Positions 11,303-63,489 of a stretch of 64,000 nt of DNA are shown here, one piece after another. The notes beneath the pieces were generated by a model. That model did no database searches, was not told the origin of the DNA, and was given only the letters and a program-made list of their open reading frames with translations. Where the stretch lies: IMG/VR virus record IMGVR_UViG_3300042010_000106, positions 186,001 to 250,000 of that record. One strand, 5' to 3'. The stretch's first letter is position 1, and every line of letters starts with the position of its first letter. A program made the position numbers and the translations under genes.

Positions 11303-11752
11303 TCATCGCTCCATATTTTTCAGGACGTAATCCATCCGCTCAAATTTAATGGCGTATTTCCGAGACTTGATGTCCTCGGCTGGAATACGGATACCCACGT
11401 AATAGCACGTGTGGTTCAAACGTTCTTTTGCGTCTTCGACAATTCGATTGTTATCGTCGAGGCACATCAGCACGGTATCAATGTAATCGCGTTTGCCATC
11501 AAGGCGAACTTTGTAGCCGTAGCACAATGTGTAATTGTGTTTCTCGGCGAAGGCAATAAACAAATCAACATTGTCCGGGTTCGGAATGTCGTCTGTGAAA
11601 TGCCCACGCTTCATTAGCGGCATTTGAATCAAACGCTGTCCGAGGTCACGCCACGTTGGCCGACTAACAGTCAGCCGTGTGATTACAGGCTTCGGTATGT
11701 AGTTCTTTACAGTGTTTAGAACGGCGCTTGCGCAACTGATAATAATCTTCAT
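11303..11752 (-). CDS. hypothetical protein with N-terminal tag (MKIIISCASA)
   Basis: 149-aa ORF coupled to tmk stop. Confidence 0.6.
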   Translation of the reverse strand: MKIIISCASAVLNTVKNYIPKPVITRLTVSRPTWRDLGQRLIQMPLMKRGHFTDDIPNPDNVDLFIAFAEKHNYTLCYGYKVRLDGKRDYIDTVLMCLDDNNRIVEDAKERLNHTCYYVGIRIPAEDIKSRKYAIKFERMDYVLKNMER

Positions 11753-20049: not shown

Positions 20050-20790
20050 TTATTTACCCGTAGGTTTCTTTGTAACTTTGGGCATTTTCGCCACGTCCGG
20101 CTGTTGTGCTTCAGGCTTTGGATTCACGATATTCACTTTGGGCAGTTTACCTGAATGATCAATCGTCACCTGCGTTACAACGGGTTCCATCGGGAACACG
20201 TCCGGTTCGTCTTCGTCATCCAGCACACCAAATTTCGGTGGTGGATTTGCTGCTGATTGTGGCATTGCATCAACACGATATTGCGGTTTAGGGCCGCGAA
20301 TCATGTAGATAAAATAACGGCCTTGCGACGGCGCTGCTTCCAGTGCGTCAACTTCTTTCGGCGTTACCTTTTCGTATGCCCACACGGCACCGTTACGGAA
20401 TTCAACGTAAAGCGTTTTGTGCTTTATGTCATAGGTGCAATGCAGAAGGTTTGAACTGTCGATTTCCAGCACACGAAGCGCCGGATCTTTCGGAACTTTC
20501 TTCTCTTTATCGAGTCCGCCTTTACCTGCATTTACAGTTATTTTGCGAACTTTGCCTGACCAACCTTTCGAATGTTCGATCAAACGATCCACTTCAATCT
20601 TTTTCAGAGTGAAGAGAATGTCCGGGGTTGTCTTGTGAACAACAGTATATTTCCCGCGCAGCAACCGAACGCCAAACACGTTACCCGGATGCAGTTCAAG
20701 AATATATTCTTTGTTGTGTCGGTTTTCTTCAAACGACAGCAGCTTGCCGCCGTATTTGTACCATTTGAAAAGGTCGTACCTGATCATCAT
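20050..20790 (-). CDS. KTSC-domain protein
   Basis: IDSSNL..TYD..KTLYVEFRNGAVWAYEKV..L..APSQGRYF; start moved to ATG 20790 to avoid overlap with upstream gene. Confidence 0.8.
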   Translation of the reverse strand: MMIRYDLFKWYKYGGKLLSFEENRHNKEYILELHPGNVFGVRLLRGKYTVVHKTTPDILFTLKKIEVDRLIEHSKGWSGKVRKITVNAGKGGLDKEKKVPKDPALRVLEIDSSNLLHCTYDIKHKTLYVEFRNGAVWAYEKVTPKEVDALEAAPSQGRYFIYMIRGPKPQYRVDAMPQSAANPPPKFGVLDDEDEPDVFPMEPVVTQVTIDHSGKLPKVNIVNPKPEAQQPDVAKMPKVTKKPTGK

Positions 20791-27234: not shown

Positions 27235-28358
27235 GCGAACTCCTTATGCGCGATCAGCGTTTGTCCCACGCTGTTAACGAACTTCATAAACGCTTCACGT
27301 ATGACGCCGAGGTATTCCGCGAGCGTGTACAGGAATGTTTTATGCCCTACACGACGCTGGTAGTCGGTGTGGTCGTCTTCGTCTTTGAGAGAACCCTTTT
27401 GACGCAGGTACTCGTTAAATTTTTCGTTGTGGTGGCCCGCCATGATTTCCAAGGCCGACCGTTTGCGCCCGGTGAATTTCCCCAACAACCGTTCATAAAC
27501 AATTGCCGATTCGACCTTGCGTACTTCGTCACTGCTAATGTTGTTGGTCACGCCTTCATACGAATATTCCTGACCATTTTCACCCATGACGCGGTGTTGG
27601 TTTTCAGATTCGCAGACCAGCTCAAACTTGTTACCGCCGAAACTATCGGTGCCGGTGTTGACCAGACGCTGACGTTTATCAGTGGTGTGAAAGCTAATCA
27701 AATTCAGTACGTGGTTGGTTCCTGTGCTGCGCAGGTAATTCAAAACCTCCGCGTCACTAACCTTTGTCGGGATCTTTTGGTAATAGGCGCTCAGCACCTT
27801 GCACGACACGTCGCTATGGAAATCTTTCAGCGCTGTGTTTTCAGAATTTGCAACGAACCGAAGTTTCGTATACACCTTCATTTTGATGTGCTTCATTACC
27901 TTCGGGATATGTTCTTCAAATGCCCGAATGTCTTTACGCATTGCCGTCAGCGTTACGTCATGCACGGTCAAATGGCGATAGCGCGCATTGTCCCGTACCA
28001 TGTTTTTGATTTTACGTCGGGCGAACAATTCGCGGAACAGTTGAACGTCCGCGCTATTCAAATACCCTTGCAACTTGTTGAAGGTGTCCGCATTGGTTGG
28101 CGAAAGGCCGATGAACAATGCAGCGTACTTGATATTTACAGTTAAATAACAGTGGGTTTGAAGCTCTAACCGCAAATCTTTTCCACTCATTCCAGTGGGC
28201 GTAAGGTCAATGTTTTTAACGGCGTGTTGGAACTCGAAAGCCCCCGTTACGCCAGTCAGACAAAGCACACACTCTTCTAGCAAACGCTGCCCGTCAGCCG
28301 AGCGCGTATCAATACCAATAGACTTAACGTATTCAACCAGCATTTCAATTGCCCCCAC
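27231..28358 (-). CDS. hypothetical protein, possible divergent sigma-70-like factor
   Basis: KDFHSDVSCKVLSAYYQK..LNYLRSTGTNHVLNLI..KRQR resembles region 2; LLGKFTGRKRSALEIMAG resembles region 4 start. Confidence 0.4.
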   Translation of the reverse strand: MGAIEMLVEYVKSIGIDTRSADGQRLLEECVLCLTGVTGAFEFQHAVKNIDLTPTGMSGKDLRLELQTHCYLTVNIKYAALFIGLSPTNADTFNKLQGYLNSADVQLFRELFARRKIKNMVRDNARYRHLTVHDVTLTAMRKDIRAFEEHIPKVMKHIKMKVYTKLRFVANSENTALKDFHSDVSCKVLSAYYQKIPTKVSDAEVLNYLRSTGTNHVLNLISFHTTDKRQRLVNTGTDSFGGNKFELVCESENQHRVMGENGQEYSYEGVTNNISSDEVRKVESAIVYERLLGKFTGRKRSALEIMAGHHNEKFNEYLRQKGSLKDEDDHTDYQRRVGHKTFLYTLAEYLGVIREAFMKFVNSVGQTLIAHKEFA

Positions 28359-29614: not shown

Positions 29615-30876
29615 TTGTTATGCTTGCGGATAGACGCGTCGGTTTTAACCGAACTGTTGCCGTGTTTTTCAATCGACTTGTCAATCAGCTTGCGAGTTTC
29701 GGCAGGCATTGCACCGTGGCTCAAACGAACCGGGGCCATGTTGTGACGCGGGATATCCCAATCAACGCGACGGGTGCGCAGACTGGCTTCCAGCATCTTG
29801 CGACTGTGTTCGGTCATGATCCAAACCAGCACAATTTTCGGGTTATGCGGGTTACGCACAATCGTTTGTGAAGCAATTGCAAATTTCTTTGGTGCACGAC
29901 GGTTAACGATTTCGAGAACTTCCTCGATTGCATCCATCAGCGCACTAGAGTTATTTACAGTTTTCAGTTTGGTTTTGTCACGGCTAGGACGAAGCGAAGC
30001 CTCGATACCCATACGTTCCAGATTCATGCAAAGCAGCATTTGATTTTCTAACACGATGAAATGGTCGCCAACCGGCGTAACCTTGAAACCGGCGCGCTCC
30101 AACTTGCCGGGATCTTTCATTGCATTAATATCGTCGAACAGTGGAACCACCGGGTGTGCAATCGCACTGAATGGCGCGCCGTGTGGAATCTCTTTCGGGA
30201 TACTGTCTTTCAAATGCTTGTACGACTCAGACAATTGCGCGTATTCGTCGTCGTGCTTTTTGGTCAGCTCACGCTTGATAATGCCAGCGTGTTGTTTTGC
30301 ATCCTTGCCATGCAATGCGTTCCAGAAATCTTCGTACGTGTAATCGTGAAGCATGTCCGAAGTAATGGCGCGCAATTGCGATGCGGTGAAGTTGTGCGAC
30401 AGGTACATACCAACGTCGTCGATAACGTCTTGGCCGTCGTACTGGTGCCCGCCAATAATGGTTTTGCCGGGGTTGTAGTCTTTCAGCAGGCGATTGATTT
30501 CGGCGGTTTTGTTTTCGTCCGTTTCGTAATCACGCGCTTGCTCTTTGTCGGCGTCTGTAACTGTGCCCGTTACAGCTTTAACCAACAGGGTGTGCAGCGG
30601 CCCCAATTTGTCACGGCTGATATCCAAACGCAATTCGGAAAAAGAAATTTCCTTGTTGTTCAACCCGGTCAGCGCGGCTTCGCACAATTTGTTGATGCGG
30701 GCCAGTACCGATTTAGAACCTTGTGGAAGTTTCCCACGGTTCGAAAGCACGGTTGCGCTGGTGATGATTTCTTTCAGCATTGCTTTGATCAGGCTGGGCT
30801 TCAGCAGAGTGCCTTCGGCCAACCCTTTTTCGAATGCCGTTAGTTGTTCGAATATTGCATCAAAGTCTTTCGACAC
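29611..30876 (-). CDS. hypothetical protein
   Basis: 421-aa ORF with typical codon usage. Confidence 0.7.
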   Translation of the reverse strand: MSKDFDAIFEQLTAFEKGLAEGTLLKPSLIKAMLKEIITSATVLSNRGKLPQGSKSVLARINKLCEAALTGLNNKEISFSELRLDISRDKLGPLHTLLVKAVTGTVTDADKEQARDYETDENKTAEINRLLKDYNPGKTIIGGHQYDGQDVIDDVGMYLSHNFTASQLRAITSDMLHDYTYEDFWNALHGKDAKQHAGIIKRELTKKHDDEYAQLSESYKHLKDSIPKEIPHGAPFSAIAHPVVPLFDDINAMKDPGKLERAGFKVTPVGDHFIVLENQMLLCMNLERMGIEASLRPSRDKTKLKTVNNSSALMDAIEEVLEIVNRRAPKKFAIASQTIVRNPHNPKIVLVWIMTEHSRKMLEASLRTRRVDWDIPRHNMAPVRLSHGAMPAETRKLIDKSIEKHGNSSVKTDASIRKHNK

Positions 30877-37191: not shown

Positions 37192-37312
37192 GCACTTACC
37201 TCAATATAGTTTGTTTTCAACACTCGAAAGGCGTGACCATTCGGAATGTCATTTACAGTTTTCGCGACGAATTCCACGCCAGCTTTAACCAGCAAAACAA
37301 GGCATGGAAAAT

Positions 37313-37813: not shown

Positions 37814-37900
37814 AAAGCTCTCCGGTGTTTACCAAAATGCCGAGTCTGTTGCCCGGCTATTCCAGAAGAATTTCTTTGTTGCTTTGATGTCTTTACAGTT

Positions 37901-38914
37901 TTATGCCAGCCCTTCGGCGCGCATATGGTCAAGCATTTTGAATCGTTCGTCATGGGTAAAGTATTCACCGATATCCATACTCAAACGAGCCAATCCGATT
38001 GGATCGACTTTCTTGGCAAGCTTCTGCACAAGAATAATCTGTTGATCTTTTTCCAAATCTTTTTCCATGGGTGCATTGTCTGCAAGCACGGCATGCAAAC
38101 CCATTTCCCCATCTTCGTCATCGCCACCATAAACCGCGTCGAGGCTGGTACTGAAATTCACTTCGGTACTGGTGCCTTCGTACAATTTTTTACGCTGCGT
38201 CTGCGGCACAGTGTAGGCAATTCCGTATTCGTGTTCTTTCGTTGTCGTCGTGGCGTTCTTTGCCCACGTTCCGATGTACGAAGTAAGCGCACCTTTGCGA
38301 CTGTCGTATTTATCCAGCGCAGTAATTACACTGCGGTGAATTGACTGCACCAAATCTCGATAGCTTGAATTGCTGCCGGGGTTGGTGGTGTGTGCTTTGG
38401 CGAGCTTGTTGTTATTTTTTATGTAGTGACCGATTACAGCGTTCCGGTATTCATAAAATTTCTTCAGGTACGGCGCCGAGATTTGCACAGCTTTGTACAT
38501 TTCGTGGCGACTGCACCGTCCAATTTCTGCGGCGTATTTGTCGAACTTAACTTGCTGCGCACGTGTAGGATTCGACATGAACAGGTTGTAGTCTCGCACG
38601 TAGCCTTCGGTATCCTTTACGAATGCACGAATGAAACGATGAATAAAACTACGTTCAATGCGGGTGTCACGAACGAGTGCAAACTTTTGGTGGCGGTCAC
38701 TCACCGACAAAAACGCAGCAAGCTTTTCGACCACGACTTCACGGTCAAGCGAACTGAGTTTTCGTTTCCGGTTGGTGGCAATCAGCAGCAGTAAATACTC
38801 AACCTGTGCGTCGAAAACGTTGGTGTAAAGAATCAGAGGCTCAAGGGCTTTGAACAGAAACATATCCATGATCTGCTGTATCTGTTCACCCGTCATATTT
38901 TTATCAGCAGACAA
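37901..38914 (-). CDS. phage sigma-70-like transcription factor
   Basis: Region 2-like SYRDLVQSIHRSVITALDKYDSRKGALTSYIGTWAK; region 3-like FSTSLDAVYGGDDEDGEMGLHAVLAD; GGAGG RBS. Confidence 0.75.
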   Translation of the reverse strand: MSADKNMTGEQIQQIMDMFLFKALEPLILYTNVFDAQVEYLLLLIATNRKRKLSSLDREVVVEKLAAFLSVSDRHQKFALVRDTRIERSFIHRFIRAFVKDTEGYVRDYNLFMSNPTRAQQVKFDKYAAEIGRCSRHEMYKAVQISAPYLKKFYEYRNAVIGHYIKNNNKLAKAHTTNPGSNSSYRDLVQSIHRSVITALDKYDSRKGALTSYIGTWAKNATTTTKEHEYGIAYTVPQTQRKKLYEGTSTEVNFSTSLDAVYGGDDEDGEMGLHAVLADNAPMEKDLEKDQQIILVQKLAKKVDPIGLARLSMDIGEYFTHDERFKMLDHMRAEGLA

Positions 38915-43746: not shown

Positions 43747-44404
43747 CGTCTTTACCAAGCTCCATTGATTTTTTGTAGTCCAGCAACGCCGGTAAATCCT
43801 CAAGCGTGGCGAGCGCGCAGCCGTAGAGGCCGTCGAGGTCTGCGGAGAACAGAGACGGGTACGGGGATTCATTGAATTTTTCAAGGAATGTTGCGCGGGA
43901 ATCAATGCCTGCGTAATCCGGTTTCGGTAAACCACGGGCAAGGATTTCAGAGAGGGTTTCAACGGTGGTGTTGCTGTACGTGAGAGTTTCCGTAAAACCG
44001 CGCCATAGGACGGCCAACGTATTCTCAGTTTTTTGACACGCATGAAATGCGAGTGGGATAGGATCTTTAACATTTGCCATGACGGCAGTAAGCAAAGTTT
44101 CTATCAGATGCAATTCAACCCGTGCTGCTTCCAGCGAAGGTTGTGCAATTAGATATCGGGCGCCGTCCTCTAACAGAGTGGCTTTAGCCCGTAGCTTTGT
44201 GGTTTCTGTTTCGGCTGTAGTATCCAGCGTTTTACGCGATTGTACTTGTCGGCTTTGACTGCGATACGATTCAGAAAAACCTGAAGCGATTGCAAACCGG
44301 CGATCCTCACGAAGTTCATAAAGAACACGTGCGAATTCTGTCCACGTGAAACAAGCTGATCCAACACGATAAACCATCTGGTCAAGTGAGTGTAGCCAGT
44401 GCAT
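43661..44404 (-). CDS. helical hypothetical protein
   Basis: 247-aa ORF with coiled-coil-like centre; start uncertain. Confidence 0.55.
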   Translation of the reverse strand: MHWLHSLDQMVYRVGSACFTWTEFARVLYELREDRRFAIASGFSESYRSQSRQVQSRKTLDTTAETETTKLRAKATLLEDGARYLIAQPSLEAARVELHLIETLLTAVMANVKDPIPLAFHACQKTENTLAVLWRGFTETLTYSNTTVETLSEILARGLPKPDYAGIDSRATFLEKFNESPYPSLFSADLDGLYGCALATLEDLPALLDYKKSMELGKDDATIFGIESESIKILTADSRLTGRSVDA

Positions 44405-44410
44405 AGACCG

Positions 44411-44438
44411 AAAAAAGGGGACACTAGGCCCCCTTTTC
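44411..44438 (-). terminator. rho-independent terminator
   Basis: AAGGGGG-loop-CCCCTT then TTTT on minus strand after 44459..45040. Confidence 0.65.
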
Positions 44439-44458
44439 TCACGCCTTACGTTTCGAGA

Positions 44459-45040
44459 TTAATCGAAGTTGTAGGCTTTCTTTTTCTTGCCGTCTTTGCC
44501 AGCTTTTTTGGAAGATTTTTCTTCCTTGCCAGCTTTGGCTTTTTTGTCGCCTTTGGATTTCTTCGAAGGCTTTTCTTCGGCTTCGGCTTTCTTCGCTTTC
44601 TTGCCTTTGGTCGGAGCTTCTTCAGCTACTTCCTTTTTAGCTTTCTTCGAAGGTTTGGCTTCGGCTTCGGCCTTGGCTTTCTTACCCTTTACCGGGGCGG
44701 CTTCTTCTTTGGCAGCTTTGGCTTTCTTGCCTTTGGTCGGAGCTTCTTCAGCTTCGGCCTTGGCGCCTTTCTTGGCTTTGGCTGGCTTGGCGTCGGCCTT
44801 GTCAGCTTTAGCGCCTTTAGCAGCCTTTGCAGGAGCTTTGGCGGCTTTGGCCGGGGCAGCGGTGGTGCCGCTCAGTTTGCCTTCCAGTTCAGCGATTTGC
44901 GCGGTCACGTCGCTAACTTGAGCGTCGAGGGTTTCGCCGGTTTTGCCGTGGGTCTTTTGTGCTGCTTCCAGAGCGCGCAGGCCCTTACGCAGACGGGAGA
45001 TTTCCGCTTTACCGTTCAGGGTAACTTCGTTCTTAGCCAT
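44459..45040 (-). CDS. histone-like K/A/E-rich protein with N-terminal coiled coil
   Basis: Repeats EEAP(T/V)KGKKAK, KPSKK; ends KKKKAYNFD. Confidence 0.75.
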   Translation of the reverse strand: MAKNEVTLNGKAEISRLRKGLRALEAAQKTHGKTGETLDAQVSDVTAQIAELEGKLSGTTAAPAKAAKAPAKAAKGAKADKADAKPAKAKKGAKAEAEEAPTKGKKAKAAKEEAAPVKGKKAKAEAEAKPSKKAKKEVAEEAPTKGKKAKKAEAEEKPSKKSKGDKKAKAGKEEKSSKKAGKDGKKKKAYNFD

Positions 45041-45065
45041 GATGCTTTATTTCCTTAACGTTATG

Positions 45066-45093
45066 AGACACGGCACACCGTTGCACCGTGTCT
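45066..45093 (-). promoter_or_regulatory. stable leader hairpin
   Basis: AGACACGG(TGCA)-ACGG-(TGTG)CCGTGTCT, ~25 nt before ATG of 44459..45040; no U-tract. Confidence 0.5.
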
Positions 45094-45153
45094 TGAATTA
45101 TTGCGAACTGATTAGAAGTTTTCTAAAGAGTTTAGAGCGCCGGGGCCGAGGAC

Positions 45154-45696
45154 TTATTCGTCGTCGTCTTCGTCTTCGTCGTCTTCTTCTTCTTCTTCGT
45201 CGTCTTCTTCTTCTTCGTCGTCTTCTTCTTCGTCTTCGTCGTCGTCGTCTTCTTCGTCTTCGTCGTCTTCTTCGTCGTCTTCTTCGTCTTCGTCGTCTTC
45301 GTCTTCGTCGTCTTCTTCTTCTTCTTCGTCGTCTTCTTCTTCTTCGTCGTCTTCTTCTTCGTCTTCGTCGTCGTCGTCTTCTTCTTCGTCGTCTTCTTCG
45401 TCGTCTTCTTCTTCTTCGTCGTCTTCTTCGTCGTCTTCTTCTTCTTCTTCGTCGTCTTCGTCGTCGTCGGACTCTTCAGCCTCTTCACGTTCCGAATCTA
45501 CGGAGTCGATGAATTCCAGAACGTCGTCGATGGTTTCCAGATCGTTGTCGGCCAGCGTAACCATGACCTGACGCAGAATGTCGAAGTTCAGCAGGTTCAG
45601 TGCATCGAGGCTCACTTGTGGTTTGGCTTTGCCTTTACCTTTTGCAGCGGCTTTCTTTGCAGGGGCTTTCTTTGCAGCAGCTTTCTTACCAGCCAT
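45154..45696 (-). CDS. protein with basic N-terminus and 104-residue poly-D/E tail
   Basis: MAGKKAAAKKAPAKK; short helical core; residues 77-180 only D/E; GGAG RBS. Confidence 0.8.
   Translation of the reverse strand: MAGKKAAAKKAPAKKAAAKGKGKAKPQVSLDALNLLNFDILRQVMVTLADNDLETIDDVLEFIDSVDSEREEAEESDDDEDDEEEEEDDEEDDEEEEDDEEDDEEEDDDDEDEEEDDEEEEDDEEEEEDDEDEDDEDEEDDEEDDEDEEDDDDEDEEEDDEEEEDDEEEEEDDEDEDDDE
45157..45468 (-). repeat. 312-nt (GAA/GAC)n codon tract with internal direct repeat
   Basis: Only two codons used; DDDDEDEEEDDEEEEDDEEEEEDDEDEDD occurs twice. Confidence 0.9.
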
Positions 45697-45877
45697 GTTT
45701 GTAACTCCGATTTATCTAGTGAGGTGTTATTGCGAATTAAGTATGCGGGCAGATTCACTTAACCTGAACCTGTCCACACTTTACAGTTTTCGTGTGAGGC
45801 GATTTCGCTGTATGCGCAACGAGGTTCGCCACTAACCTTTACAGTTTGTTAGAAGTCGTCAACACGTCGAGTGCGAC

Positions 45878-46453
45878 TTACTTCTTTTTTGCTTTTTTGC
45901 CACCGTCTTTGATGTCGGTAACTTTAGCTTTTTTCTTGCCTTCTTTTTCAGAAGAAGCTTTTGCACCGCGTCCGGATTGTTGCGAACCTTCCAGATCCAG
46001 CGCTTTGATTTCGTAAGAAACCTTGTCGTTGCTGGTGTACTTTACAGTTTCGCCATTGCCAGTTACGACGATGGTGTCACCTTCGAACTTCAGCACGCCG
46101 GTTGCTTCGGTGAACTTGCGACGTTGCAGAACGGTAATGCTACCGATTTCGTCAACCTTGCCGAGCTGTTCCAGAACATCGCTGTTGGCGAAAACGGAAA
46201 CGGCCATTTTCTTCGAAGCAGAAGAAACTTTGTGACGGAAAACGGTGTGCGTATCGGAACGCAGAACCAGATAGCCCGGAATTTCAACCGGCATGGTGGA
46301 GAAACCGGTTACGGTGAACAGGCCGCTCTTCATGCTGAATGGAGTTTTTGCGCTGGTGCCAGTCAGTTTGCGTTCCAGTTTGGTGGTACGCGAAACTTTA
46401 GTACGTGCAACGCCCGGTTTTGCGCCTTTGGTTTTGCTTTCAGTCTTAGCCAT
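45878..46453 (-). CDS. beta-rich hypothetical protein with K-rich termini
   Basis: 191 aa; AGGA RBS. Confidence 0.7.
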   Translation of the reverse strand: MAKTESKTKGAKPGVARTKVSRTTKLERKLTGTSAKTPFSMKSGLFTVTGFSTMPVEIPGYLVLRSDTHTVFRHKVSSASKKMAVSVFANSDVLEQLGKVDEIGSITVLQRRKFTEATGVLKFEGDTIVVTGNGETVKYTSNDKVSYEIKALDLEGSQQSGRGAKASSEKEGKKKAKVTDIKDGGKKAKKK

Positions 46454-46472
46454 GATTCTTTACTTCCTTACT

Positions 46473-47354
46473 TTACAGTTTTTTAGTGAGGTTAATGCTA
46501 ACGCCAATGTTAGCACTCGCCGGGAGGTGTTCTGCATGTGTTACCGCTTGAACGCTTGCGGAAATGTCGTCTGCACAAAGTGCGTTGAACAGTTCCAGAA
46601 CGCTTGGACGTGTCTTGAAATTAGCTACGTCAAAAACGATGTCGAGCGACGTTTCAATTCCTGTTGCTTTCATGAGGTTCCGAACAACCTTGGCGTAGGA
46701 AGCAGAAACATCAGAAAGTTTTGCAGAACTGTCGGTCAACCCGGCAGCATGAACGTAAACGCTAACGATCAGCTCTACGTCATTTACAGTTTGGTGCGAA
46801 GCGGTTTGCGATACCTTGTTGGAAATCGCTACGCTCGTTGTGTAGAAATCAGAACGACTGATTGCGTATTCTTCACCGGGCGCTTCGAAAGCTGCACCGG
46901 CAAAGCTATCAACCAATTGTTTTTGAATTTGTTTCAGCAGTGCATCAGCACGTGCGTTGATTTGTTCGTCATCCGCTGCGAGGAAAACGTAATTGGTTGC
47001 TTCCATGCCTTTCAGCATGTCATACAGCGCAGTCAGAGGTTTGATTGCAATGCCATTCTTGGCGAGCGAAAGAGGACGCAGCAAACTATAGGTTTGTCCG
47101 TCTTCCTCGTATTCTTTTACAGTTTCCACAACGGAGTTAACAAAGTTATCGACAGCGCCGATAAAGATTTCAACACGTGGAATGAAACGCACAGGCCATT
47201 CATATGCGTAGGTGCCTTGCACCGGGGTGAAATCGTTGGTGTTACGCGGGGCCGCTGTTACAGCCGGTTGCGGTGCTTCGCCCAAACGACGTTCACGCAT
47301 TGCAATCTGTGTGGTCTGGTGAATTTGTGGGTCAAGAACTTCTAATTCGTTCAT
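46473..47354 (-). CDS. hypothetical protein
   Basis: 293 aa; GAGG RBS. Confidence 0.7.
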   Translation of the reverse strand: MNELEVLDPQIHQTTQIAMRERRLGEAPQPAVTAAPRNTNDFTPVQGTYAYEWPVRFIPRVEIFIGAVDNFVNSVVETVKEYEEDGQTYSLLRPLSLAKNGIAIKPLTALYDMLKGMEATNYVFLAADDEQINARADALLKQIQKQLVDSFAGAAFEAPGEEYAISRSDFYTTSVAISNKVSQTASHQTVNDVELIVSVYVHAAGLTDSSAKLSDVSASYAKVVRNLMKATGIETSLDIVFDVANFKTRPSVLELFNALCADDISASVQAVTHAEHLPASANIGVSINLTKKL

Positions 47355-48637
47355 ACATCAATCCTCGAAACGTCGATAAAGCGAACACTTGCGGTTGCGC
47401 TTGGGTGATAGATAAGGGCTTCTACTTTCGCGTCTAACGCTTTCTCAAATAACTTTACAGTTTTTGATACGTCGCTAGTTTCAGCAATGTGACCCACGCA
47501 CTCTAGTGCAGGATGGTTTGTACTCATGAATCCCAACGATTGCAAATGCGCACGATGGGTACGGCACAATTCCAACGTAAACAAACCGCGCCGGTTCCAT
47601 TTATAGAGTTCGTGCGCGACATAACGCAGCTTAGCTTTAGGACGCGTTAGCGTATACGCTTCATACTCGGCTTGAGGATTCGCGTTCTTTACTACGTCTG
47701 CATATTCCGCCGCTTTACGACGGGCTTTGATCAACTCATTACGAACTTGTGCCGGTGGTTGCTGGCCGTTATCCGTATAGCGTTTCGTTGATCGTTCATG
47801 TCTGTTTACAGTTTTTTCAGCCTCGGCCAAAGCTTCGATATAAAAGCCGATATCAAATGATTCACGCGTACGTTCAACGGTATCGTCATCGAGGTATGCG
47901 CGAAGCTGTTCATGCGCGTCAATCTTGCCTTTGCCGATTGATTCAGGCACATAAATTGTTGCAGCAACAACGTACATCGAATTCTGTCCGAATGGTTCGT
48001 ACGAATTGATAATTACTTTGTCGCGGAGTTCACCAAACGCACGCGGAAATCCAAGGTCAATCAGTTTGTCGATTGCCAAGAAAATATCCTCACCGTCGCG
48101 ATAGAAACCAGCGTACAGGTGCGGGACATAACCGGGAACGTGACGATAGATCAAATACACGCGCACGCCTTTCAAACGCGGCGCAACGAACATGCCGGGT
48201 TTGAGTTCGGATTGGTGTTTGTGGTCGTGAATTTGGTCAATGATGTTTAGGCAGGGGTATATCAGGCTATCCGGGTAAATTTCAGCGGGGGCGGCGTGGG
48301 CATGCTTCAAAGCCTCTTCACAGGACGCGTCAAAGGGCTTTGTAGCGTGTACTAACGTGGCGTGGGCCGTCCACACCTTCGCCAGCTCTTCGTTGTATGG
48401 TAAGCCGTAGCCAACGTTATAGAGCATGGCAACCGTAACCATGTCGGGCAGACTACCCGCCGAGGCACGTTTAACGATGTTCAACAATTCAGTCTTTTTC
48501 ATGCGGACATCGACCGTAAGGCGCTGGTGTGCAACGCGCCCCATGTATTCATAGGTAAACGAATGCACGTGATTGGACACTTCACAGATTTGCAAAATGC
48601 CCTGTTCATGGAGCCGGTGAATTGTGCTAGTCAGCAT
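47351..48637 (-). CDS. degenerate NAD-dependent DNA ligase adenylation-domain-like protein with a Sel1-like repeat
   Basis: FVAPRLKGVRVYLIY aligns to LigA motif I (EPKIDG..SLLY) without catalytic K; HLQSLGF; VAMLYNVGYGLPYNEELAKVW Sel1-like. Confidence 0.45.
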   Translation of the reverse strand: MLTSTIHRLHEQGILQICEVSNHVHSFTYEYMGRVAHQRLTVDVRMKKTELLNIVKRASAGSLPDMVTVAMLYNVGYGLPYNEELAKVWTAHATLVHATKPFDASCEEALKHAHAAPAEIYPDSLIYPCLNIIDQIHDHKHQSELKPGMFVAPRLKGVRVYLIYRHVPGYVPHLYAGFYRDGEDIFLAIDKLIDLGFPRAFGELRDKVIINSYEPFGQNSMYVVAATIYVPESIGKGKIDAHEQLRAYLDDDTVERTRESFDIGFYIEALAEAEKTVNRHERSTKRYTDNGQQPPAQVRNELIKARRKAAEYADVVKNANPQAEYEAYTLTRPKAKLRYVAHELYKWNRRGLFTLELCRTHRAHLQSLGFMSTNHPALECVGHIAETSDVSKTVKLFEKALDAKVEALIYHPSATASVRFIDVSRIDV

Positions 48638-48869
48638 TGGCGTTACTCACAACTTGATTTATTACATCGCGATACTTTTCGAGCGCGTGCGTTTTCACAA
48701 CGAGCAGTGCCCCATCTTTACAGGGCATGATTTGTATCACGGTTGGGCATTGCATTGTTAAGGCAGCAGCGGCATCTTCAGCCGATACGCTCATGGTATT
48801 ACCAACAAAAAAGATTTCGTCTTCTGCTGACAATCCCAAAATATAAGTCAAAAGATCCGCTGCTTCCAT
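48627..48869 (-). CDS. hypothetical protein
   Basis: 80-aa ORF. Confidence 0.55.
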   Translation of the reverse strand: MEAADLLTYILGLSAEDEIFFVGNTMSVSAEDAAAALTMQCPTVIQIMPCKDGALLVVKTHALEKYRDVINQVVSNANAD

Positions 48870-48875
48870 TTTCGT

Positions 48876-49319
48876 TTACGCCTGTACCATTGCGACGATA
48901 TCAGCACCCGACATGAAAATCTTGTCGTTGTTTGCGTGCACTATGAAACCGCCGTCCGTTTCCTGAATGTAATAGGAAATCTTGCCTTGTCGAAGCACAA
49001 CAGATTTGCCCATCGTTTTACCGCCGATGCTGCGCGCCAGTTCTGCGACAGCGTGCGATGGTTCCTTTACAGTTTCGGAAAAGAATTCCAGAAACTTTGG
49101 AAGGTCAGCGAAACGATGCACGTAGCCGTACGTTTCCAGCTTAACGATACTGCCTTCGTGTTCAACGGTTACGGTCGCTTCGTACTGCGGCGTTTTGATG
49201 TTCACGTGCGGGCCAATCAGGCCGGTGTAAACAGCTTCGTGGCTGAAATCCCCGCCGTGGTTGGTGTGGGCCAGTTGCAAGGCCAAATCAATGTTGTGGA
49301 TCTTTTGGGAACGGTTCAT
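48876..49319 (-). CDS. hypothetical protein
   Basis: 147-aa ORF with AGGA RBS. Confidence 0.65.
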   Translation of the reverse strand: MNRSQKIHNIDLALQLAHTNHGGDFSHEAVYTGLIGPHVNIKTPQYEATVTVEHEGSIVKLETYGYVHRFADLPKFLEFFSETVKEPSHAVAELARSIGGKTMGKSVVLRQGKISYYIQETDGGFIVHANNDKIFMSGADIVAMVQA

Positions 49320-50802: not shown

Positions 50803-52644
50803 TTACTCGCCTTCTTGCACAGCAGCCAGAAGGGATTCCAGATTCACGCCAGCTTTTGCAACTGGTTTATCCATACCGACCAGCAGAGGCGAACCGTCTT
50901 TGTTCAGGCCGACCAGAATGTATTGCTTGTCTTCCATTGCAACGGTGTGGCCCGGTTCGATTTCGTAACCGATGATATCGAACACGTCTTGAGTTGCGTA
51001 CCACAGCTTAACGTAAGCGGTGATGTTGCGACCCGGCATCAGTTTTTCCAGACGGGCTTTTGCGTTTTCAACGAGTTCGGTAACGTCGAGCGGGAAAGTG
51101 GTTTCGGCTTCTTCTTCCTCTTCGAAAGATTCAGGCTCTTCCTCTTCTTCGTCTTCGTCGTCGAAGGTTTCCGGCTCTTCTTCTTCGTCGTCTTCGTCTT
51201 CTTCGTCGAAGGTTTCCGGCTCTTCTTCTTCGTCGCCTACTTCCGGCTCTTCCTCTTCTTCGTCTTCTTCCTGTTCCAGCAATTCATGCGATTCGAAATC
51301 CGCAGGCTTGCCAGTCGGCGCAACGTGACCTTGCGATTCTTGCAGTTTCGCAAAACCGTTTTCCAGCTCTTTTACTTTGCGTGCGATGTCGGCTTTGTTG
51401 GCGTCGGTCGCGGCGAAAGCGAAAGTAACGGTCATCATGTTGCTACCGTTCTGAGTTGCAGTCGCCGAAACCAGATCAATGTTATAGGCTTCTTGCAGAC
51501 CCATCAGAACGCATTCACGCAGGTGGTCTTTTACGTCCAGAGTGGTGTCGTAATCGAACGCGTCAACGTCCAGCTTTTTAACGGTTTGCGACGGCGCGGT
51601 ACGGTTGCGAGGAACAGCGGTGCCAGTGCGCGGCAAATCTTTACCGGTGTAAACGAAACCGGAACCGTCACGGGCGATTTCTTCAACGCTGCATTTGAAA
51701 CCGCGATCAGTTTCAACGGTGTTGTTTTTGAAAGTTTTGGTAACGGTGTGAGTTACCTTGCCGACTTTCAGCGCTTGGTTTTTCACTTCGTTACGGGACA
51801 CGGCAGCCGGTTTTTTCGCAGCAGCAGCTTTTGCGAGTGCAGCGGCGTGCAATTCTTCCAGCTCTTCGGCGTATTCGTCGGAGATTACAGCGAAGCCACC
51901 ACCGACCAGACTTTTGCGAACGTCTTCGATTTGGAATTCTTCACCGCTTTCAGTTACGCAGCGACCGGATTTGTAAGTGGTTTCAACGGTGAAATCTTCG
52001 CCGTCGATTGCAACGACTTTGCCGCGAATGTCTTTCGTGGTCAGCAGGCCGGGAGCGCTGAACAGGGTATCAACAGCATTTGCAGCGGTCGAAGCTTTTG
52101 CAGCCTTGGCAGGTTTTGCGGTCACGCCGCCTTTGGCAACAGCGCCACCTTTTGTAGCAGCAGCTTTTACAGCGCTTGCAGGAACGGCGGTTTTGTTGTC
52201 GGTGGTAACGAAGCCTTTGCCTTTACGAACGACGTTCGCCAGTTCGATACGTTGACCATCGGCCAGCACGACAATGCCTTTCGAACGGATTTGTTTTTCA
52301 ACGGCAACGCCGTTTACTTTTTTGCCGTCGAGTTCGTCAGCGGTAACAGCGGCGGCAGGTGCACGGCCAGCAGGAGCTTTTGCAGCAGGAGCAGCGGCAG
52401 CGGTTGCCTTCTTGCTGTTCTCGGCAGGAGCTTTTGCAGTTGCGCCTTTACCTGCAACGTCGATGAACAGACCTTTGCCGCGATTGTACAGATCAGCAGC
52501 CGGATATTCAGCGCCCGATTCGGTGCGGATGATCCCTTTGCTGGTCAGGTGTTTCACAATCACTTCTTGCACCTTGGTTTCTTTCGGGGTGCCTTTGCGG
52601 GAAATGATGTTCAGAGTACGGCCAGCGTGGTTAACAGTAGACAT
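50803..52644 (-). CDS. multidomain protein: four repeated beta modules, A/K-rich linkers, acidic tract
   Basis: Repeats KGIIRTESG..Y, KGIVVLADG..I, GRCVTESG..F, NTVETDRG each followed by G.GF; AGGAG RBS; strong codon bias suggests high expression. Confidence 0.8.
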   Translation of the reverse strand: MSTVNHAGRTLNIISRKGTPKETKVQEVIVKHLTSKGIIRTESGAEYPAADLYNRGKGLFIDVAGKGATAKAPAENSKKATAAAAPAAKAPAGRAPAAAVTADELDGKKVNGVAVEKQIRSKGIVVLADGQRIELANVVRKGKGFVTTDNKTAVPASAVKAAATKGGAVAKGGVTAKPAKAAKASTAANAVDTLFSAPGLLTTKDIRGKVVAIDGEDFTVETTYKSGRCVTESGEEFQIEDVRKSLVGGGFAVISDEYAEELEELHAAALAKAAAAKKPAAVSRNEVKNQALKVGKVTHTVTKTFKNNTVETDRGFKCSVEEIARDGSGFVYTGKDLPRTGTAVPRNRTAPSQTVKKLDVDAFDYDTTLDVKDHLRECVLMGLQEAYNIDLVSATATQNGSNMMTVTFAFAATDANKADIARKVKELENGFAKLQESQGHVAPTGKPADFESHELLEQEEDEEEEEPEVGDEEEEPETFDEEDEDDEEEEPETFDDEDEEEEEPESFEEEEEAETTFPLDVTELVENAKARLEKLMPGRNITAYVKLWYATQDVFDIIGYEIEPGHTVAMEDKQYILVGLNKDGSPLLVGMDKPVAKAGVNLESLLAAVQEGE

Positions 52645-52697
52645 GTGAATCTCCTAAACTTACCTAGAAATGTGAGTGCCTTTTAAATCGGGCATGG

Positions 52698-52930
52698 GTT
52701 TCGACGGTTCCAATCTATCAAACGGCTATTGAACAAGCAAGCGCTATTCAACGTAGGCAACCATTAACCATCTAATGGGCCTAACCATTTGAGCCAGTAG
52801 CATTGGAACGGGTAACGCTCATTGCTACGGCATCAACACTCAAGGGGTTCCGAGGCGCCTATATAGTGGGCTGTGAAACGAAACTTACCTTGATCCGTGA
52901 GCGTTACGCTTTAGGGTCGAAACGTTACGG
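52698..52930 (-). ncRNA. candidate structured ~230-nt leader RNA or ncRNA
   Basis: Nested helices 52698-52705/52916-52923, 52707-52714/52802-52809, 52812-52821/52898-52907 plus internal hairpins; begins just after a promoter. Confidence 0.55.
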
Positions 52931-54471: not shown

Positions 54472-55320
54472 TTAGTGCCGTTTGTAAGCTAATGCCCGTT
54501 GTTTGATTTCGGACAGTGCGTATTTGTTGCAAAGCTTTGTAAATTCTTTCACGTCTAACGGTGAAATTGACATGTCCAATTCTGACACGTCGTAGGCATC
54601 CAAAGCAAACGTTATCAGCTTTCGATTCAGCTTCAATCGCTGCTTTATATTTACAGTTTTCTGCGCGCCTTTCGGAAAGCGTTCTAATGGAATCTTTTCA
54701 GCCTTTCCAAACTCTTCGATCAGCTTAACTGCGGTTGTAGGCCCAATGCCGGGGATTCCGTCAATGCCATCGACTTTATCACCATCCAGCATTAGGAAGT
54801 CAACCATTCGTTTTGGTTCAACGAGGAATACTTCTTTACAGTTTTTACGCGTGATCGTGAGTTTCTTTTGCGGGTTAATCAAACGAATGTGTTTGTGCAC
54901 AAGGCATTGCGCAAAATCTTTATCCGTTGACAGGATATACGCACGGCCACCATCGTAATACACGGCAGCAGCCGCCACGATGTCATCCGCCTCAATCCCG
55001 CGAATGCCCACAACACAAATGCCCATCGCGATCAACATTTCCACGATGATTGGCGTTTGTATTTTCAGCGCGGCAGACTTTTCAGGATCTTTGATACGCC
55101 CGCCTTTGTAATCCGGGTGCAGTTTGTGCCTGAAATTGTTCGTGCCGGGGCGGTCGAAGGTCACAACACACTCTGTCGCTTTGGTATCGCGCAGATTCGC
55201 TAACAGGATTCCGAAAAATCCGTGAATAACGTTTGTCGGTGTGCCCTTGTGTGAGCTAGGCCGTACCGCGTGGTAGGCCCGGTGCATTGCGTTGGTGCCG
55301 TCAACTACAAGGCGAGTCAT
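54472..55320 (-). CDS. 5'-3' exonuclease / flap endonuclease (PolA N-terminal, T4 RNase H-like)
   Basis: VVDGTN, FD, YKGGR, EADD, STDKD, GDKVDGIDGIPGIGPTTA. Confidence 0.9.
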   Translation of the reverse strand: MTRLVVDGTNAMHRAYHAVRPSSHKGTPTNVIHGFFGILLANLRDTKATECVVTFDRPGTNNFRHKLHPDYKGGRIKDPEKSAALKIQTPIIVEMLIAMGICVVGIRGIEADDIVAAAAVYYDGGRAYILSTDKDFAQCLVHKHIRLINPQKKLTITRKNCKEVFLVEPKRMVDFLMLDGDKVDGIDGIPGIGPTTAVKLIEEFGKAEKIPLERFPKGAQKTVNIKQRLKLNRKLITFALDAYDVSELDMSISPLDVKEFTKLCNKYALSEIKQRALAYKRH

Positions 55321-56960: not shown

Positions 56961-57503
56961 TTAGCGTTTGTTTTTGCCACCACATGTTGTGCACGGCCTT
57001 GGCTGCACACGTTTGCGGATAGCGTTGTATGTTTCGTTGTTGGACTCGATGCCCATGATGGACGATGCGGTTGCGCCCACTTCGTTGAAGCGTCGAGTCA
57101 TTGCGAATTTGTCGAACATCGTTTCGTACGGGAAAGGTTTGTTGTGTGTCTTTTCCCACAGCGGAATATCAAACGATTCTGCTTTGACCTTGTTCAGTTC
57201 GAAACCTTCCAGAACCGGGGCCATAAGTGTGTTCACACGATGTGCCTTTACAGTTCGGCCAGCAGCGTCAATGATCATCAACGCCGACAATTCTACGTTG
57301 TTGTTTACCAACGAAACCATAGGGCCGTGCTGAATTGCAGCGATTGCAAACCACGTGTCCACCAGCGGCAATTCTTGCCCGCCTTCAAACATCGGCAAAT
57401 GGATTGCACGCATGCAGGCATACACAACGGTGTTGAAGTGCATGTCACTGCCGAAAACAAAAACACTTTTCTGTTCTGGAACTGGTGTTTGTTCTTCACT
57501 CAT
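56961..57503 (-). CDS. hypothetical protein with C-terminal CxxC
   Basis: 180 aa ending PRPCTTCGGKNKR; GAGG RBS. Confidence 0.65.
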   Translation of the reverse strand: MSEEQTPVPEQKSVFVFGSDMHFNTVVYACMRAIHLPMFEGGQELPLVDTWFAIAAIQHGPMVSLVNNNVELSALMIIDAAGRTVKAHRVNTLMAPVLEGFELNKVKAESFDIPLWEKTHNKPFPYETMFDKFAMTRRFNEVGATASSIMGIESNNETYNAIRKRVQPRPCTTCGGKNKR

Positions 57504-63398: not shown

Positions 63399-63451
63399 AA
63401 AGAATTCCTCCTTTCGTATAGGAGTTATTTACAGTTTTTCGGCCCTATATG

Positions 63452-63485
63452 AAAAAGCCCCCGAATCCATTAAGGAAACGAGGGC
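63452..63485 (-). terminator. rho-independent terminator
   Basis: GCCCTCG...CGGGGGC then TTTTT after stop of 63490..63960. Confidence 0.55.
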
Positions 63486-63489
63486 CATT

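What the first reader, a model, noticed from the sequence alone, without database searches (positions are those of the whole stretch)
45780..49075. Oriented 10-mer AAACTGTAAA repeated at least 15 times, with near-regular spacing in one cluster
Seen: exact TTTACAGTTT (+ strand) at 29954, 37252, 37892, 45780, 45838, 46041, 46472, 46783, 47116, 47454, 47805, 49066, 54650, 54835, 63428, with near-matches at 20531, 31597, 57247. An equal-base model expects about 0.06 per strand in 64 kb. I saw none in the opposite orientation and no exact copy in the first 29 kb (manual scan, not exhaustive). Five consecutive copies are 311, 333, 338 and 351 nt apart. Copies occur both intergenically (19-84 nt upstream of starts at 37191, 37813, 45696, 46453, 63398) and inside genes in different frames (KTVK, KNCK, KL-stop), so selection is at nucleic-acid level. 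Inference: most likely a phage-sigma promoter element akin to T4 late TATAAATA, stacked before abundant genes. Alternatives: an RNA-processing site or a parS-, Chi- or KOPS-like DNA site.
Basis: partly seen in the sequence, partly recalled or inferred. Interest (0 to 1): 0.75.

Follow-up and report, generated by a model that had tools for sequence, protein, structure and literature searches.

The report
Jumbo-phage promoter motif, stacked array
The repeated 10-mer is real and is most likely the single-element promoter read by this uncultured giant phage's own sigma factor; it was already predicted in the relative Lu11, but here it also forms a conserved stack of promoters, four of them inside genes, ahead of the region's most strongly codon-biased genes.

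Summary
There are 15 exact TTTACAGTTT copies, all on the + strand, which is the sense strand of the minus-strand genes (AAACTGTAAA). Dinucleotide shuffles expect 0.35. The 8-nt core ACTGTAAA is 19:0 sense to antisense. Synonymous-codon shuffles give 0.6 intragenic copies against 9 seen.

The window is an uncultured relative of Pseudomonas jumbo phage Lu11. Lu11's GenBank record already marks the same motif as 'putative middle/late promoter'.

Evidence for a promoter:
- In Lu11, all 36 ACTGTAAAT copies follow gene direction through seven strand blocks.
- 20 of those 36 lie in the 5% of the genome that is non-coding.
- There is no -35 element, and a conserved A sits 8 nt after the core.
- The motif persists between the sigma and SSB genes down to 36% sigma identity.

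New here is the architecture of the flagged cluster. Four intragenic copies sit at fixed codons in two genes, with 2-3 tandem intergenic copies after them. This layout is conserved in about 14 contigs of Lu11-like phages. The motif copies are the longest invariant nucleotide runs in those two genes. The stack precedes strongly codon-biased genes for basic or acidic proteins.

No transcript data exist, so promoter function remains inferred. This is a new member of a known kind, with moderate interest.

The parts
63428..63437 (-). Motif copy, intergenic. It lies about 14 nt after a terminator-like hairpin and 29 nt before the ATG at 63398.
63452..63486 (-). Terminator-like hairpin plus T-run immediately upstream of the 63428 copy. 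Lu11 has the same arrangement at 18968.
   Evidence: read from the sequence
57247..57256 (-). Core-only copy (GAACTGTAAA), 87 nt before the start at 57159.
54835..54844 (-). Motif copy inside the exonuclease gene 54472-55320. It is the only copy in the K-N-C-K frame.
54650..54659 (-). Motif copy inside the exonuclease gene, 206 nt before the strongly codon-biased H1-like gene 53841-54443. Lu11 (115604) and L007 also carry a copy inside the corresponding exonuclease gene.
49066..49075 (-). Motif copy inside gene 48876-49319, upstream of gene A. Relatives have an upstream copy at a different position, about -826.
47805..47814 (-). Intragenic copy 1 in gene A (codon 276). Invariant 11-nt run in four phages, and the position is conserved in about 14 Lu11-like contigs.
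47454..47463 (-). Intragenic copy 2 in gene A (codon 393). Invariant 11-nt run in four phages, and the position is conserved.
47116..47125 (-). Intragenic copy 3, in gene B. It is retained in all relatives but displaced by 21 nt here relative to Lu11, HRDY3 and L007.
46783..46792 (-). Intragenic copy 4, in gene B. It forms the longest invariant nucleotide run in gene B.
46472..46481 (-). Copy that overlaps the stop codon of gene B (CTG TAA), 18 nt before the ATG of gene C. It is specific to this phage.
46041..46050 (-). Copy inside gene C. It is specific to this phage and absent from Lu11 and HRDY3.
45838..45847 (-). First of the tandem intergenic pair upstream of gene D. Every relative has 2-3 tandem copies at this place.
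45780..45789 (-). Second of the tandem intergenic pair, 83 nt before the ATG of gene D.
37892..37901 (-). Copy abutting the stop codon of the sigma gene, 78 nt before the Tad3-like gene.
37252..37261 (-). Copy 60 nt before the SSB gene. Every relative examined also has a copy directly upstream of its SSB gene (Lu11, L013-L017), in most of them filling the sigma-SSB spacer.
29954..29963 (-). Intragenic copy in gene 29611-30876. Lu11 has a copy in the syntenic gene (gp181, at 135574).
28135..28144 (-). Core-only copy (TAACTGTAAA followed by T), intragenic.
20531..20540 (-). Core-only copy (TAACTGTAAA followed by T), intragenic.
11706..11715 (-). Core-only copy (ACACTGTAAA), intragenic. This is the weakest candidate.
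37901..38914 (-). Phage sigma-70-family factor (337 aa), the presumed reader of the motif. It corresponds to Lu11 gp174.
47351..48637 (-). Gene A (428 aa, function unknown, phrog_35683). It carries two conserved internal motif copies.
46473..47354 (-). Gene B (293 aa, function unknown). It carries two internal copies plus one on its stop codon.
45878..46453 (-). Gene C (191 aa, lysine-rich tail). Strong codon bias, Nc 35.
45154..45696 (-). Gene D (180 aa): basic N-terminus followed by a tail of about 110 aa of Asp and Glu.
44459..45040 (-). Gene E (193 aa): helical N-terminus plus a histone-H1-like Lys/Ala-rich tail. It has the lowest Nc in the window (30.4).
44411..44436 (-). GC-rich hairpin plus T-run that closes the A-E transcription unit.
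   Evidence: read from the sequence

Best explanation
AAACTGTAAA (core ACTGTAAA, usually followed by T or G) is the single -10-type promoter element of a phage-specific transcription class in an uncultured Lu11-like jumbo phage. The phage's own sigma-70-family factor (37901-38914) most likely directs the host core RNA polymerase to it, and transcription most likely starts at a purine 8 nt after the core. No -35 element is involved. This architecture matches the phiEco32 gp36 promoters.

The flagged 3.3 kb is a conserved multi-promoter stack. It has one copy upstream of gene A, two inside gene A, two inside gene B and one on B's stop codon, one inside gene C, and a tandem pair before gene D. 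All of them fire in the same direction. Transcript dosage should therefore rise stepwise towards genes C, D and E, which encode lysine-rich, acidic and H1-like proteins and end at a strong terminator.

Shown here: the enrichment, the strand rule, nucleotide-level purifying selection on the intragenic copies, and their positional conservation. Inferred: that the sites initiate transcription, that the phage sigma reads them, and that the purpose is dosage.
For: Enrichment and selection:
- 15 exact copies against 0.35 expected, all on one strand. The core is 19:0 sense to antisense.
- Codon-preserving shuffles give 0.59 intragenic copies against 9 observed.
- ACT-GTA spells 11 of 24 T-V-K/N tripeptides against 3.1% expected, P = 4e-11.

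Promoter-type behaviour:
- Lu11's record annotates the same motif as 'putative middle/late promoter', including the tandem pair before gp164 and the site before the SSB gene.
- In the whole Lu11 genome, 36 of 36 ACTGTAAAT copies are co-oriented with genes across seven strand blocks. This includes the lone reversed primase gene.
- 20 of those 36 lie in the 5.3% of the genome that is non-coding, P = 1e-16. In the window the figure is 6 of 15, P = 1e-4.
- In 61 aligned instances nothing upstream of -3 is conserved, and A is present in 44 of 61 at the position 8 nt after the core.
- A terminator-like hairpin lies directly upstream of the 63428 copy, and Lu11 18968 has the same arrangement.

Conservation:
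- In four-phage codon alignments the two longest invariant nucleotide runs of gene A are the two motif copies, although only 14% of third positions are conserved. The longest invariant run in gene B is also the motif. One B copy moved 21 nt but was kept.
- The same four intragenic positions, plus 2-3 tandem intergenic copies, recur in about 14 Lu11-like contigs at 49-56% protein identity.
- The motif, or a C-to-G variant, lies directly upstream of the SSB gene, next to the sigma gene, in relatives down to 36% sigma identity.

The sigma and the downstream genes:
- The sigma has a genuine region 2, with the Y and W of regions 2.3/2.4 conserved, and matches E. coli sigma70 by fold. No region 3 or 4 is detectable by sequence.
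- Genes downstream of motif copies are the most codon-biased in the window: E 30.4, the 53841 gene 31.1, C 35.1 and SSB 40.0, against a median of 49.6.
- phiEco32 gp36 gives experimental precedent. Its promoters are a single element, tAATGTAtA, with the start 6-8 bp downstream, and its sigma lacks region 4 (PMC8948821).
Against: There is no transcript evidence of any kind. The RNA runs that hold 'words' of the region match only the low-complexity acidic repeat. The runs that were laid are contigs and show no molecule ends.

The copy at 46472 lies only 18 nt before an ATG. A start 8 nt after the core would cut into the Shine-Dalgarno sequence.

The strongly codon-biased 613-aa gene (50803-52644) has a 335-nt upstream spacer with no motif, so high expression does not always need this element.

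The conserved A after the core falls on a second codon position in the intragenic copies, so there it may partly reflect protein constraint.

That the phage sigma, rather than the host sigma or another factor, reads the motif rests only on co-occurrence.
Confidence: 0.72

Rival explanations
1. The motif is the binding site of a phage protein other than sigma, such as a transcription activator, an anti-terminator loader or one of the abundant basic proteins encoded next to it. It marks promoters or a chromatin-like hub without being the -10 element itself.
For: The densest cluster sits next to genes for H1-like and acidic proteins. No -35 element is present and no sigma binding has been shown. 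The cluster is conserved as a unit.
Against: The strict co-orientation with genes genome-wide and the fixed short distance to gene starts and to a conserved purine fit a core promoter element. The motif co-occurs with the sigma gene across very distant relatives. A characterised single-element sigma promoter has the same layout.
Confidence: 0.1
2. On top of acting as promoters, the stack is a transcription-primed replication origin, as with the T7 phi1.1A/B tandem promoters or the T4 oriF/oriG R-loop origins. This reading does not exclude the best explanation.
For: Cumulative GC skew reaches its minimum at about 46 kb in the window, and near 125-130 kb in Lu11, with no change of gene orientation there. 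In a model of orientation plus replication direction for Lu11, the best-fitting origin is at 124 kb, which is the position of the array. The region is surrounded by replication genes.
Against: The fit improves the residual sum of squares only from 0.1771 to 0.1709, which is not significant after scanning two change-points. No AT-rich unwinding element and no iterons beyond the 10-13-nt motif were found. The skew patterns of the window and Lu11 do not agree in detail.
Confidence: 0.08
3. The motif acts in RNA, as an endonuclease processing site, a stability signal or a translation signal.
For: It is on the sense strand and is often near gene boundaries. Two copies overlap or abut stop codons.
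Against: One copy follows a terminator-like hairpin, and Lu11 18968 shows the same sequence arrangement; upstream transcripts should have ended before such copies. There is no consistent RNA structure around the copies: mean z is -0.52 against -0.28 +/- 1.1 for controls. Rfam finds no family. The conserved purine at a fixed distance downstream, and the absence of conserved flanks, fit a promoter.
Confidence: 0.06
4. The motif is a DNA polarity or segregation signal of the Chi, KOPS, parS or pac kind, or a strand-specific nick site.
For: It is strictly oriented and over-represented. One dense cluster exists.
Against: Orientation flips with every gene block in Lu11, even for a single reversed gene, and not with genome arms. 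The sequence is asymmetric and dispersed before genes, unlike parS. Over half of the Lu11 copies lie in the 5% of the genome that is intergenic.
Confidence: 0.03

Closest known systems
'Putative middle/late promoter' features in the GenBank record of Pseudomonas phage Lu11 (NC_017972; Adriaenssens et al. 2012, J Virol 86:6369, paper not held)
   Same: The core is the same (CTGTAAAT...). Both place it before the SSB gene and as a tandem pair before the gp164 homologue. Synteny is shared across the whole window.
   Different: The Lu11 features are in-silico predictions of 16 nt that stress the downstream T-A...GTA part. The four copies inside gp161 and gp162 are not annotated there. In the window phage the information shifts upstream (AAA before the core) and the T-A after it is relaxed. 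Protein identity is only 36-51%.
phiEco32 gp36-dependent middle/late promoters (tAATGTAtA)
   Same: Each is a single conserved element of about 9-11 nt containing TGTA, with no -35 element. The start is 6-8 bp downstream in phiEco32 and is inferred at 8 nt after the core here. A phage-encoded sigma-70-family protein without recognisable region 4 works with the host core polymerase.
   Different: The sequences differ and the phage family is unrelated (a 77-kb podovirus). [quoted passage not shown]
T4 late promoters (TATAAATA, read by gp55 with gp33 and the gp45 clamp; established knowledge)
   Same: Both are -10-only promoters. Lu11's TGTAAATA differs from TATAAATA at one base. Many copies lie inside upstream genes.
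   Different: The sigma here is a 337-aa protein with a clear sigma-70 region 2 and a sigma70-like fold. No test against gp55 or gp33 was run. The motif precedes replication genes and is absent from Lu11's tail and baseplate block, so the class looks middle rather than true late.
Tandem promoter pairs before highly expressed or origin-linked genes (rRNA P1-P2; T7 phi1.1A/1.1B; established knowledge)
   Same: Two or three co-oriented promoters lie 35-78 nt apart before a highly expressed unit.
   Different: Here the stack extends about 2 kb upstream into two coding sequences, at codon positions conserved across a phage clade.

Membership tests
Sigma-70-family-dependent promoter (phage-sigma class) | Transcripts start at a fixed short distance downstream of the element | not testable with these tools
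   No usable RNA data. The only indirect support is a conserved A 8 nt after the core, present in 44 of 61 instances.
Sigma-70-family-dependent promoter (phage-sigma class) | The element is co-oriented with the genes it precedes | tested here: met
   19:0 in the window. 36 of 36 in Lu11 across seven strand blocks.
Sigma-70-family-dependent promoter (phage-sigma class) | Enrichment in spacers upstream of genes | tested here: met
   20 of 36 Lu11 copies lie in 5.3% non-coding DNA, P = 1e-16. In the window, 6 of 15, P = 1e-4.
Sigma-70-family-dependent promoter (phage-sigma class) | A cognate sigma is encoded and co-inherited with the element | tested here: met
   A sigma with region 2 and a sigma70-like fold. 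The motif lies next to the sigma gene in relatives at 36-93% identity. Binding itself was not tested.
Single-element (-10-only) promoter, phiEco32 gp36 type | No conserved -35 element, and a sigma without region 4 | tested here: inconclusive
   No information content upstream of -3. No region 4 by Pfam or PDB profile search. However, the model shows a small C-terminal three-helix unit (residues 283-333) whose nature is unresolved.
T4-type late promoter | TATAAATA element read by a gp55-like sigma, with gp33 and a sliding clamp | tested here: inconclusive
   The element is ACTGTAAA(T/G), not TATAAATA. The sigma matches sigma-70 region 2 and the sigma70 fold, but no search against gp55 or gp33 was made. 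The motif is absent from Lu11's tail and baseplate block.
KOPS / Chi-like replichore or end-polarity signal | Orientation is set by genome arm or replication direction, not by individual genes | tested here: not met
   Orientation flips with each gene block in Lu11, including the single reversed primase gene at 104.9-106.0 kb.
parS-like centromere | A palindromic or inverted-repeat site clustered at one locus | tested here: not met
   The motif is asymmetric with no inverted copies. Copies are dispersed over 280 kb in Lu11.
Structured RNA element or known RNA family | Conserved secondary structure, or an Rfam match | tested here: not met
   No Rfam hit in the window. Fold z-scores around the copies are no different from controls.

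The most novel reading that the evidence does not exclude
The conserved stack is more than a dosage device. Four promoters are held at fixed codons inside two genes, followed by a tandem pair, and together they act as a transcription-activated replication origin or R-loop zone for Lu11-like jumbo phages. This would explain why sites that constrain protein sequence have been kept for so long, and why the weak GC-skew minimum falls on the array in two genomes.
Probability: 0.08. Interest if true: 0.65.

Novelty: new member of a known kind. Interest (0 to 1): 0.4.

Why it matters
Most jumbo phages have no RNA polymerase of their own and are thought to redirect the host enzyme with their own sigma factors. 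For the large, mostly uncultured family around Lu11 and PaBG, no promoter has been verified.

This analysis gives a sharply defined, testable sigma-promoter pair. The pair is conserved across at least 118 sigma clusters' worth of diversity. It provides a ready list of predicted start sites.

It also gives a clean natural example of promoters kept under purifying selection inside coding sequence. There the promoter dictates both the amino acids (T-V-K/N) and the codons.

The element would also help with annotating operons and timing classes in metagenomic jumbo-phage genomes. It could serve as an orthogonal promoter-sigma pair in Pseudomonas.

Tried and rejected
- RNA evidence. Two run searches found only DNA metagenomes holding the phage. 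The 'RNA' runs share words only with the GAA/GAC acidic repeat. Laying four runs (contigs) gave no molecule ends. It gave 24 strain variants, none inside the 90 nt of motif, but only 0.6 were expected there, so this is uninformative.
- Internal protein repeats as the cause of the roughly 330-nt spacing. BLASTP of gene A against gene B shows no repeat, and no DNA repeat longer than 10-13 nt exists. The spacing is a by-product of conserved positions. In relatives it ranges from 293 to 372 nt, with extra copies at 90 and 222 nt.
- Host-type promoters. Sigma-70 consensus matches are not enriched: 10 against 15 in shuffles, and 15 against 19.
- Function of genes A, B and C. Pfam, PHROGs and the protein atlas gave nothing usable.
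- Literature. Searching for the motif string returned only noise. The Lu11 genome paper is not held. No paper on HRDY3 was found.
- PaBG-like distant relatives lack the intragenic array and use AAAGTGTAAA. The array is therefore specific to the Lu11-like clade.
- Slippery-site or frameshift reading of the A-run before the core. This was rejected by inspecting the frames.
- Replication origin from GC skew. The best-fit location coincides with the array, but the gain in fit is not significant.

Full report
**Observation.** TTTACAGTTT occurs 15 times in the window, always on the + strand and at exactly the coordinates listed. Dinucleotide-preserving shuffles give 0.35 copies on average and never more than 2. 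All long open reading frames of the window lie on the minus strand, and my own gene call puts coding density at 94%. In the sense orientation the motif is therefore AAACTGTAAA. With one mismatch there are 25 matches, again all in the sense orientation. The 8-nt core ACTGTAAA is present 19 times in sense and never in antisense. The spacings of 311, 333, 338 and 351 nt are correct.

**Nucleotide-level selection.** Shuffling synonymous codons within each gene gives 0.59 intragenic copies (maximum 4 in 1000) against 9 observed.
- Eleven of the 12 intragenic core copies use the same frame, ACT GTA AAx (T-V-K/N).
- One copy reads K-N-C-K, and one lies on a stop codon as CTG TAA.
- The third frame contains TAA, so inside genes the motif can hardly sit anywhere else.

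Selection on the DNA is shown more directly by codon choice. Of 24 T-V-K/N tripeptides, 11 are spelled ACT-GTA where codon usage predicts 3.1% (P = 4e-11). The tripeptide itself is 2.4 times more frequent than amino-acid composition predicts. The motif shapes both the codons and the protein sequence.

**What genome this is.** Megablast finds almost nothing. Protein-level searches place the window in the Lu11/HRDY3 group of Pseudomonas jumbo phages, part of the 'Lupandier' group of PMC7412058. The source is a 312-kb IMG/VR contig from a rhizosphere sample. The window is syntenic with Lu11 from about 108 to 150 kb in reverse orientation. The shared genes include topoisomerase II subunits, ribonucleotide reductase, an exonuclease, the sigma factor, SSB, a RecA-like protein, the DnaB helicase, terminase and portal.

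**The motif is already annotated in Lu11.** The Lu11 record carries 16-nt 'putative middle/late promoter' features that begin CTGTAAAT. Two stand in tandem before gp164 and one before the SSB gene. These are the orthologous places of the window copies at 45838/45780 and 37252. The annotation is a prediction. I found no experimental work on it.

**Tests of the promoter reading.**
1. *Orientation.* I fetched the complete Lu11 genome. All 36 ACTGTAAAT copies point the same way as the local genes through seven strand blocks. That includes the single copy in front of the lone reversed primase gene between two forward blocks. This rules out a signal set by genome arm or replication direction.
2. *Position.* Twenty of the 36 Lu11 copies lie in intergenic spacers, which make up 5.3% of the genome (P = 1e-16). 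In the window, 6 of 15 touch non-coding DNA (P = 1e-4).
3. *Context.* The copy at 63428 follows a terminator-like hairpin with a T-run by about 14 nt and precedes a Shine-Dalgarno sequence and an ATG by 29 nt. Lu11 has the same arrangement at 18968. A processing site just after a terminator would make little sense, whereas a promoter there is classical.
4. *Shape of the element.* I aligned 61 instances from four phages. Nothing is conserved upstream of position -3, so there is no -35 element. The conserved block is (A)AAACTGTAAA followed by T or G, then A or G. A further A, present in 44 of 61 instances, lies 8 nt after the core. If that A is the start, TGTAAA(T)(A) occupies -14 to -7, which is the geometry of a -10 element.
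5. *RNA alternatives.* Rfam finds no family in the window. Folding 80 nt around each copy gives z-scores no different from random positions.
6. *Host promoters.* Sigma-70 consensus matches are not enriched.

**The sigma factor.**
- The 337-aa protein of 37901-38914 matches Pfam Sigma70_r2 and PHROG 17569.
- A profile of 48 homologues aligns to regions 2.1-2.4 of RpoD, with the Tyr and Trp of regions 2.3/2.4 invariant.
- The AlphaFold model (pLDDT 79) matches E. coli sigma-70 chains in Foldseek.
- No region 3 or region 4 is detectable by sequence. A small C-terminal three-helix unit remains unassigned.
- The family is large: 118 clusters down to 32% identity, mostly on contigs of 200-314 kb.
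- In five relatives sampled at 68, 49, 44, 38 and 36% sigma identity, the SSB gene directly or closely follows the sigma gene and is preceded by the motif.
- In three of these relatives the motif is AACTGTAAAT, in one AACTGTAAAG, and in one (as in PaBG) it is the variant AAAGTGTAAA. The sigma and the element have travelled together over a very long time.
- The closest characterised analogue is phiEco32 gp36. Its promoters are a single element, tAATGTAtA, with starts 6-8 bp downstream, and its sigma lacks region 4 (PMC8948821).

**The flagged cluster.** In the sense direction the region reads as follows.
- A copy lies inside the small gene 48876-49319.
- Gene A (47351-48637) has copies at codons 276 and 393.
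- Gene B (46473-47354) has two internal copies and one on its stop codon.
- Gene C (45878-46453) has one internal copy.
- A tandem pair 58 nt apart follows.
- Gene D comes next, with a basic N-terminus and then about 110 residues of Asp and Glu.
- Gene E follows, with a helical N-terminus and a Lys/Ala-rich H1-like tail.
- A GC hairpin with a T-run closes the unit at about 44411-44436.

Codon alignments of the window, Lu11, HRDY3 and a metagenomic relative put the two gene-A copies at identical alignment columns. They form the two longest invariant nucleotide runs of the whole gene (11 nt each), although only 14% of third codon positions are conserved. In gene B the longest invariant run is again the motif. 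The other B copy has moved 21 nt in the window phage but was kept. A wider scan recovered 17 loci. About 14 of them are Lu11-like contigs at 49-56% identity, and some are near-identical to each other. These all carry copies near +820, +1170, +1460-1515 and +1825-1860 relative to the start of gene A, and 2-3 tandem copies near +2760-2950. The two PaBG-like loci (29% identity) keep only the intergenic copy. In Lu11 this cluster is the densest in the genome, with 6 copies in 2 kb. The 'near-regular spacing' is thus a conserved set of positions rather than a strict period. No repeat longer than 10-13 nt exists, and genes A and B show no detectable sequence similarity to each other by BLASTP.

**What the stack is for.** Effective number of codons (Nc) ranks the genes just downstream of motif copies as the most biased in the window. 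The values are gene E 30.4, the H1-like gene 53841-54443 (preceded by two copies inside the exonuclease gene) 31.1, gene C 35.1, SSB 40.0 and gene D 41.0, against a median of 49.6. The simplest reading is additive initiation. Each promoter adds transcripts that run to the terminator after gene E, so dosage rises from A to E. This is inference. It is weakened by one counter-example: the strongly biased 613-aa gene 50803-52644 has a 335-nt upstream spacer without the motif.

**Timing class.** In Lu11 the motif precedes the genes for DNA polymerase, clamp loader, primase, topoisomerase II, SSB and thymidylate synthase. It is absent from the 38-kb baseplate and tail-fibre block at 175-214 kb. The class therefore looks 'middle' (replication and nucleoid proteins) more than T4-style 'late'.

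**Origin idea.** Cumulative GC skew has its minimum at about 46 kb in the window and near 125-130 kb in Lu11, without a change of gene orientation. A model with orientation and replication direction places the best Lu11 'origin' at 124 kb, on the array. The fit improves only from 0.1771 to 0.1709, which is not significant. I keep this as the novel case at low probability.

**Limits.** No primary transcript data exist for this phage or any relative in the resources available. Promoter activity, the identity of the factor that reads the motif and the dosage function are therefore inferred from comparative and statistical evidence.

**Verdict.** The element itself is a new member of a kind already predicted in Lu11 and characterised in principle in phiEco32. 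The conserved intragenic promoter stack is the part that had not been described.

Noticed in passing
window 37313-37813 (-); L013 1960-2187 and 3393-3980; L015 12376-12723: An anti-defence locus flanks the sigma gene. The window has a Tad3-like Thoeris inhibitor (Pfam E = 7e-14) directly after a motif copy. Relatives carry Tad2-like, Tad3 and Acb2/Tad1-like genes at the same place.
   Followed up: partly
window 53841-54443, 50803-52644, 45154-45696, 44459-45040 (all -): A set of strongly codon-biased, low-complexity proteins. Two have helical N-termini with Ala/Lys/Pro-rich histone-H1/AlgP-like tails. One has a tail of about 110 aa of Asp and Glu. One is a 613-aa protein with Ala/Lys linkers and an acidic block. 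Function is unknown; they may be phage chromatin or condensate proteins.
   Followed up: partly
window 52645-52979: A 335-nt spacer upstream of the codon-biased 613-aa gene. It has no motif copy, no Rfam match and no convincing sigma-70 promoter, so a different promoter class or an unknown RNA may lie here.
   Followed up: partly
window 45727-45736 and 45098-45107 (-): The 10-mer TTCGCAATAA occurs exactly twice in the window, once in each of the 5' leaders of genes D and E. It may be a shared operator or a chance match.
   Followed up: partly
window 45060-45095 (-): A 7-bp GC-rich hairpin without a T-run lies between genes D and E. It may be an RNA stabiliser or processing structure rather than a terminator.
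   Followed up: no
L013 (contig start 2.2 kb before sigma), L014 (4.7 kb before sigma): Two independent assemblies of 200-280 kb end a few kb upstream of the sigma gene. The likely cause is that the acidic and Lys-rich repeat genes next to the array break assemblies.
   Followed up: no
window 44000-46000; Lu11 about 124-130 kb: The cumulative GC-skew minimum lies near the promoter stack in both genomes without a change of gene orientation. AT skew of -0.40 at 44-46 kb is explained by the GAA/GAC acidic repeat.
   Followed up: yes
L016 20523-20963; L017 6387-8366 and 8409-9998: Distant relatives with the same sigma encode an RNA-polymerase alpha-CTD-like protein (PF03118). They also carry a 7-deazaguanine-type gene set (radical SAM, GTP cyclohydrolase I, PTPS) and a gene with an intein signature just upstream of sigma.
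   Followed up: no
window 48627-48637 / 47351-47354: The third-longest invariant nucleotide run in gene A is CGAGGATTGA at its 3' end. It is probably a conserved Shine-Dalgarno plus overlapping stop and start that couples translation of gene B to gene A.
   Followed up: no
window 45154-45480: 'RNA' sequencing runs from many unrelated organisms share 31-mers with the GAA/GAC repeat of gene D. This is a low-complexity artefact that mimics expression evidence.
   Followed up: yes
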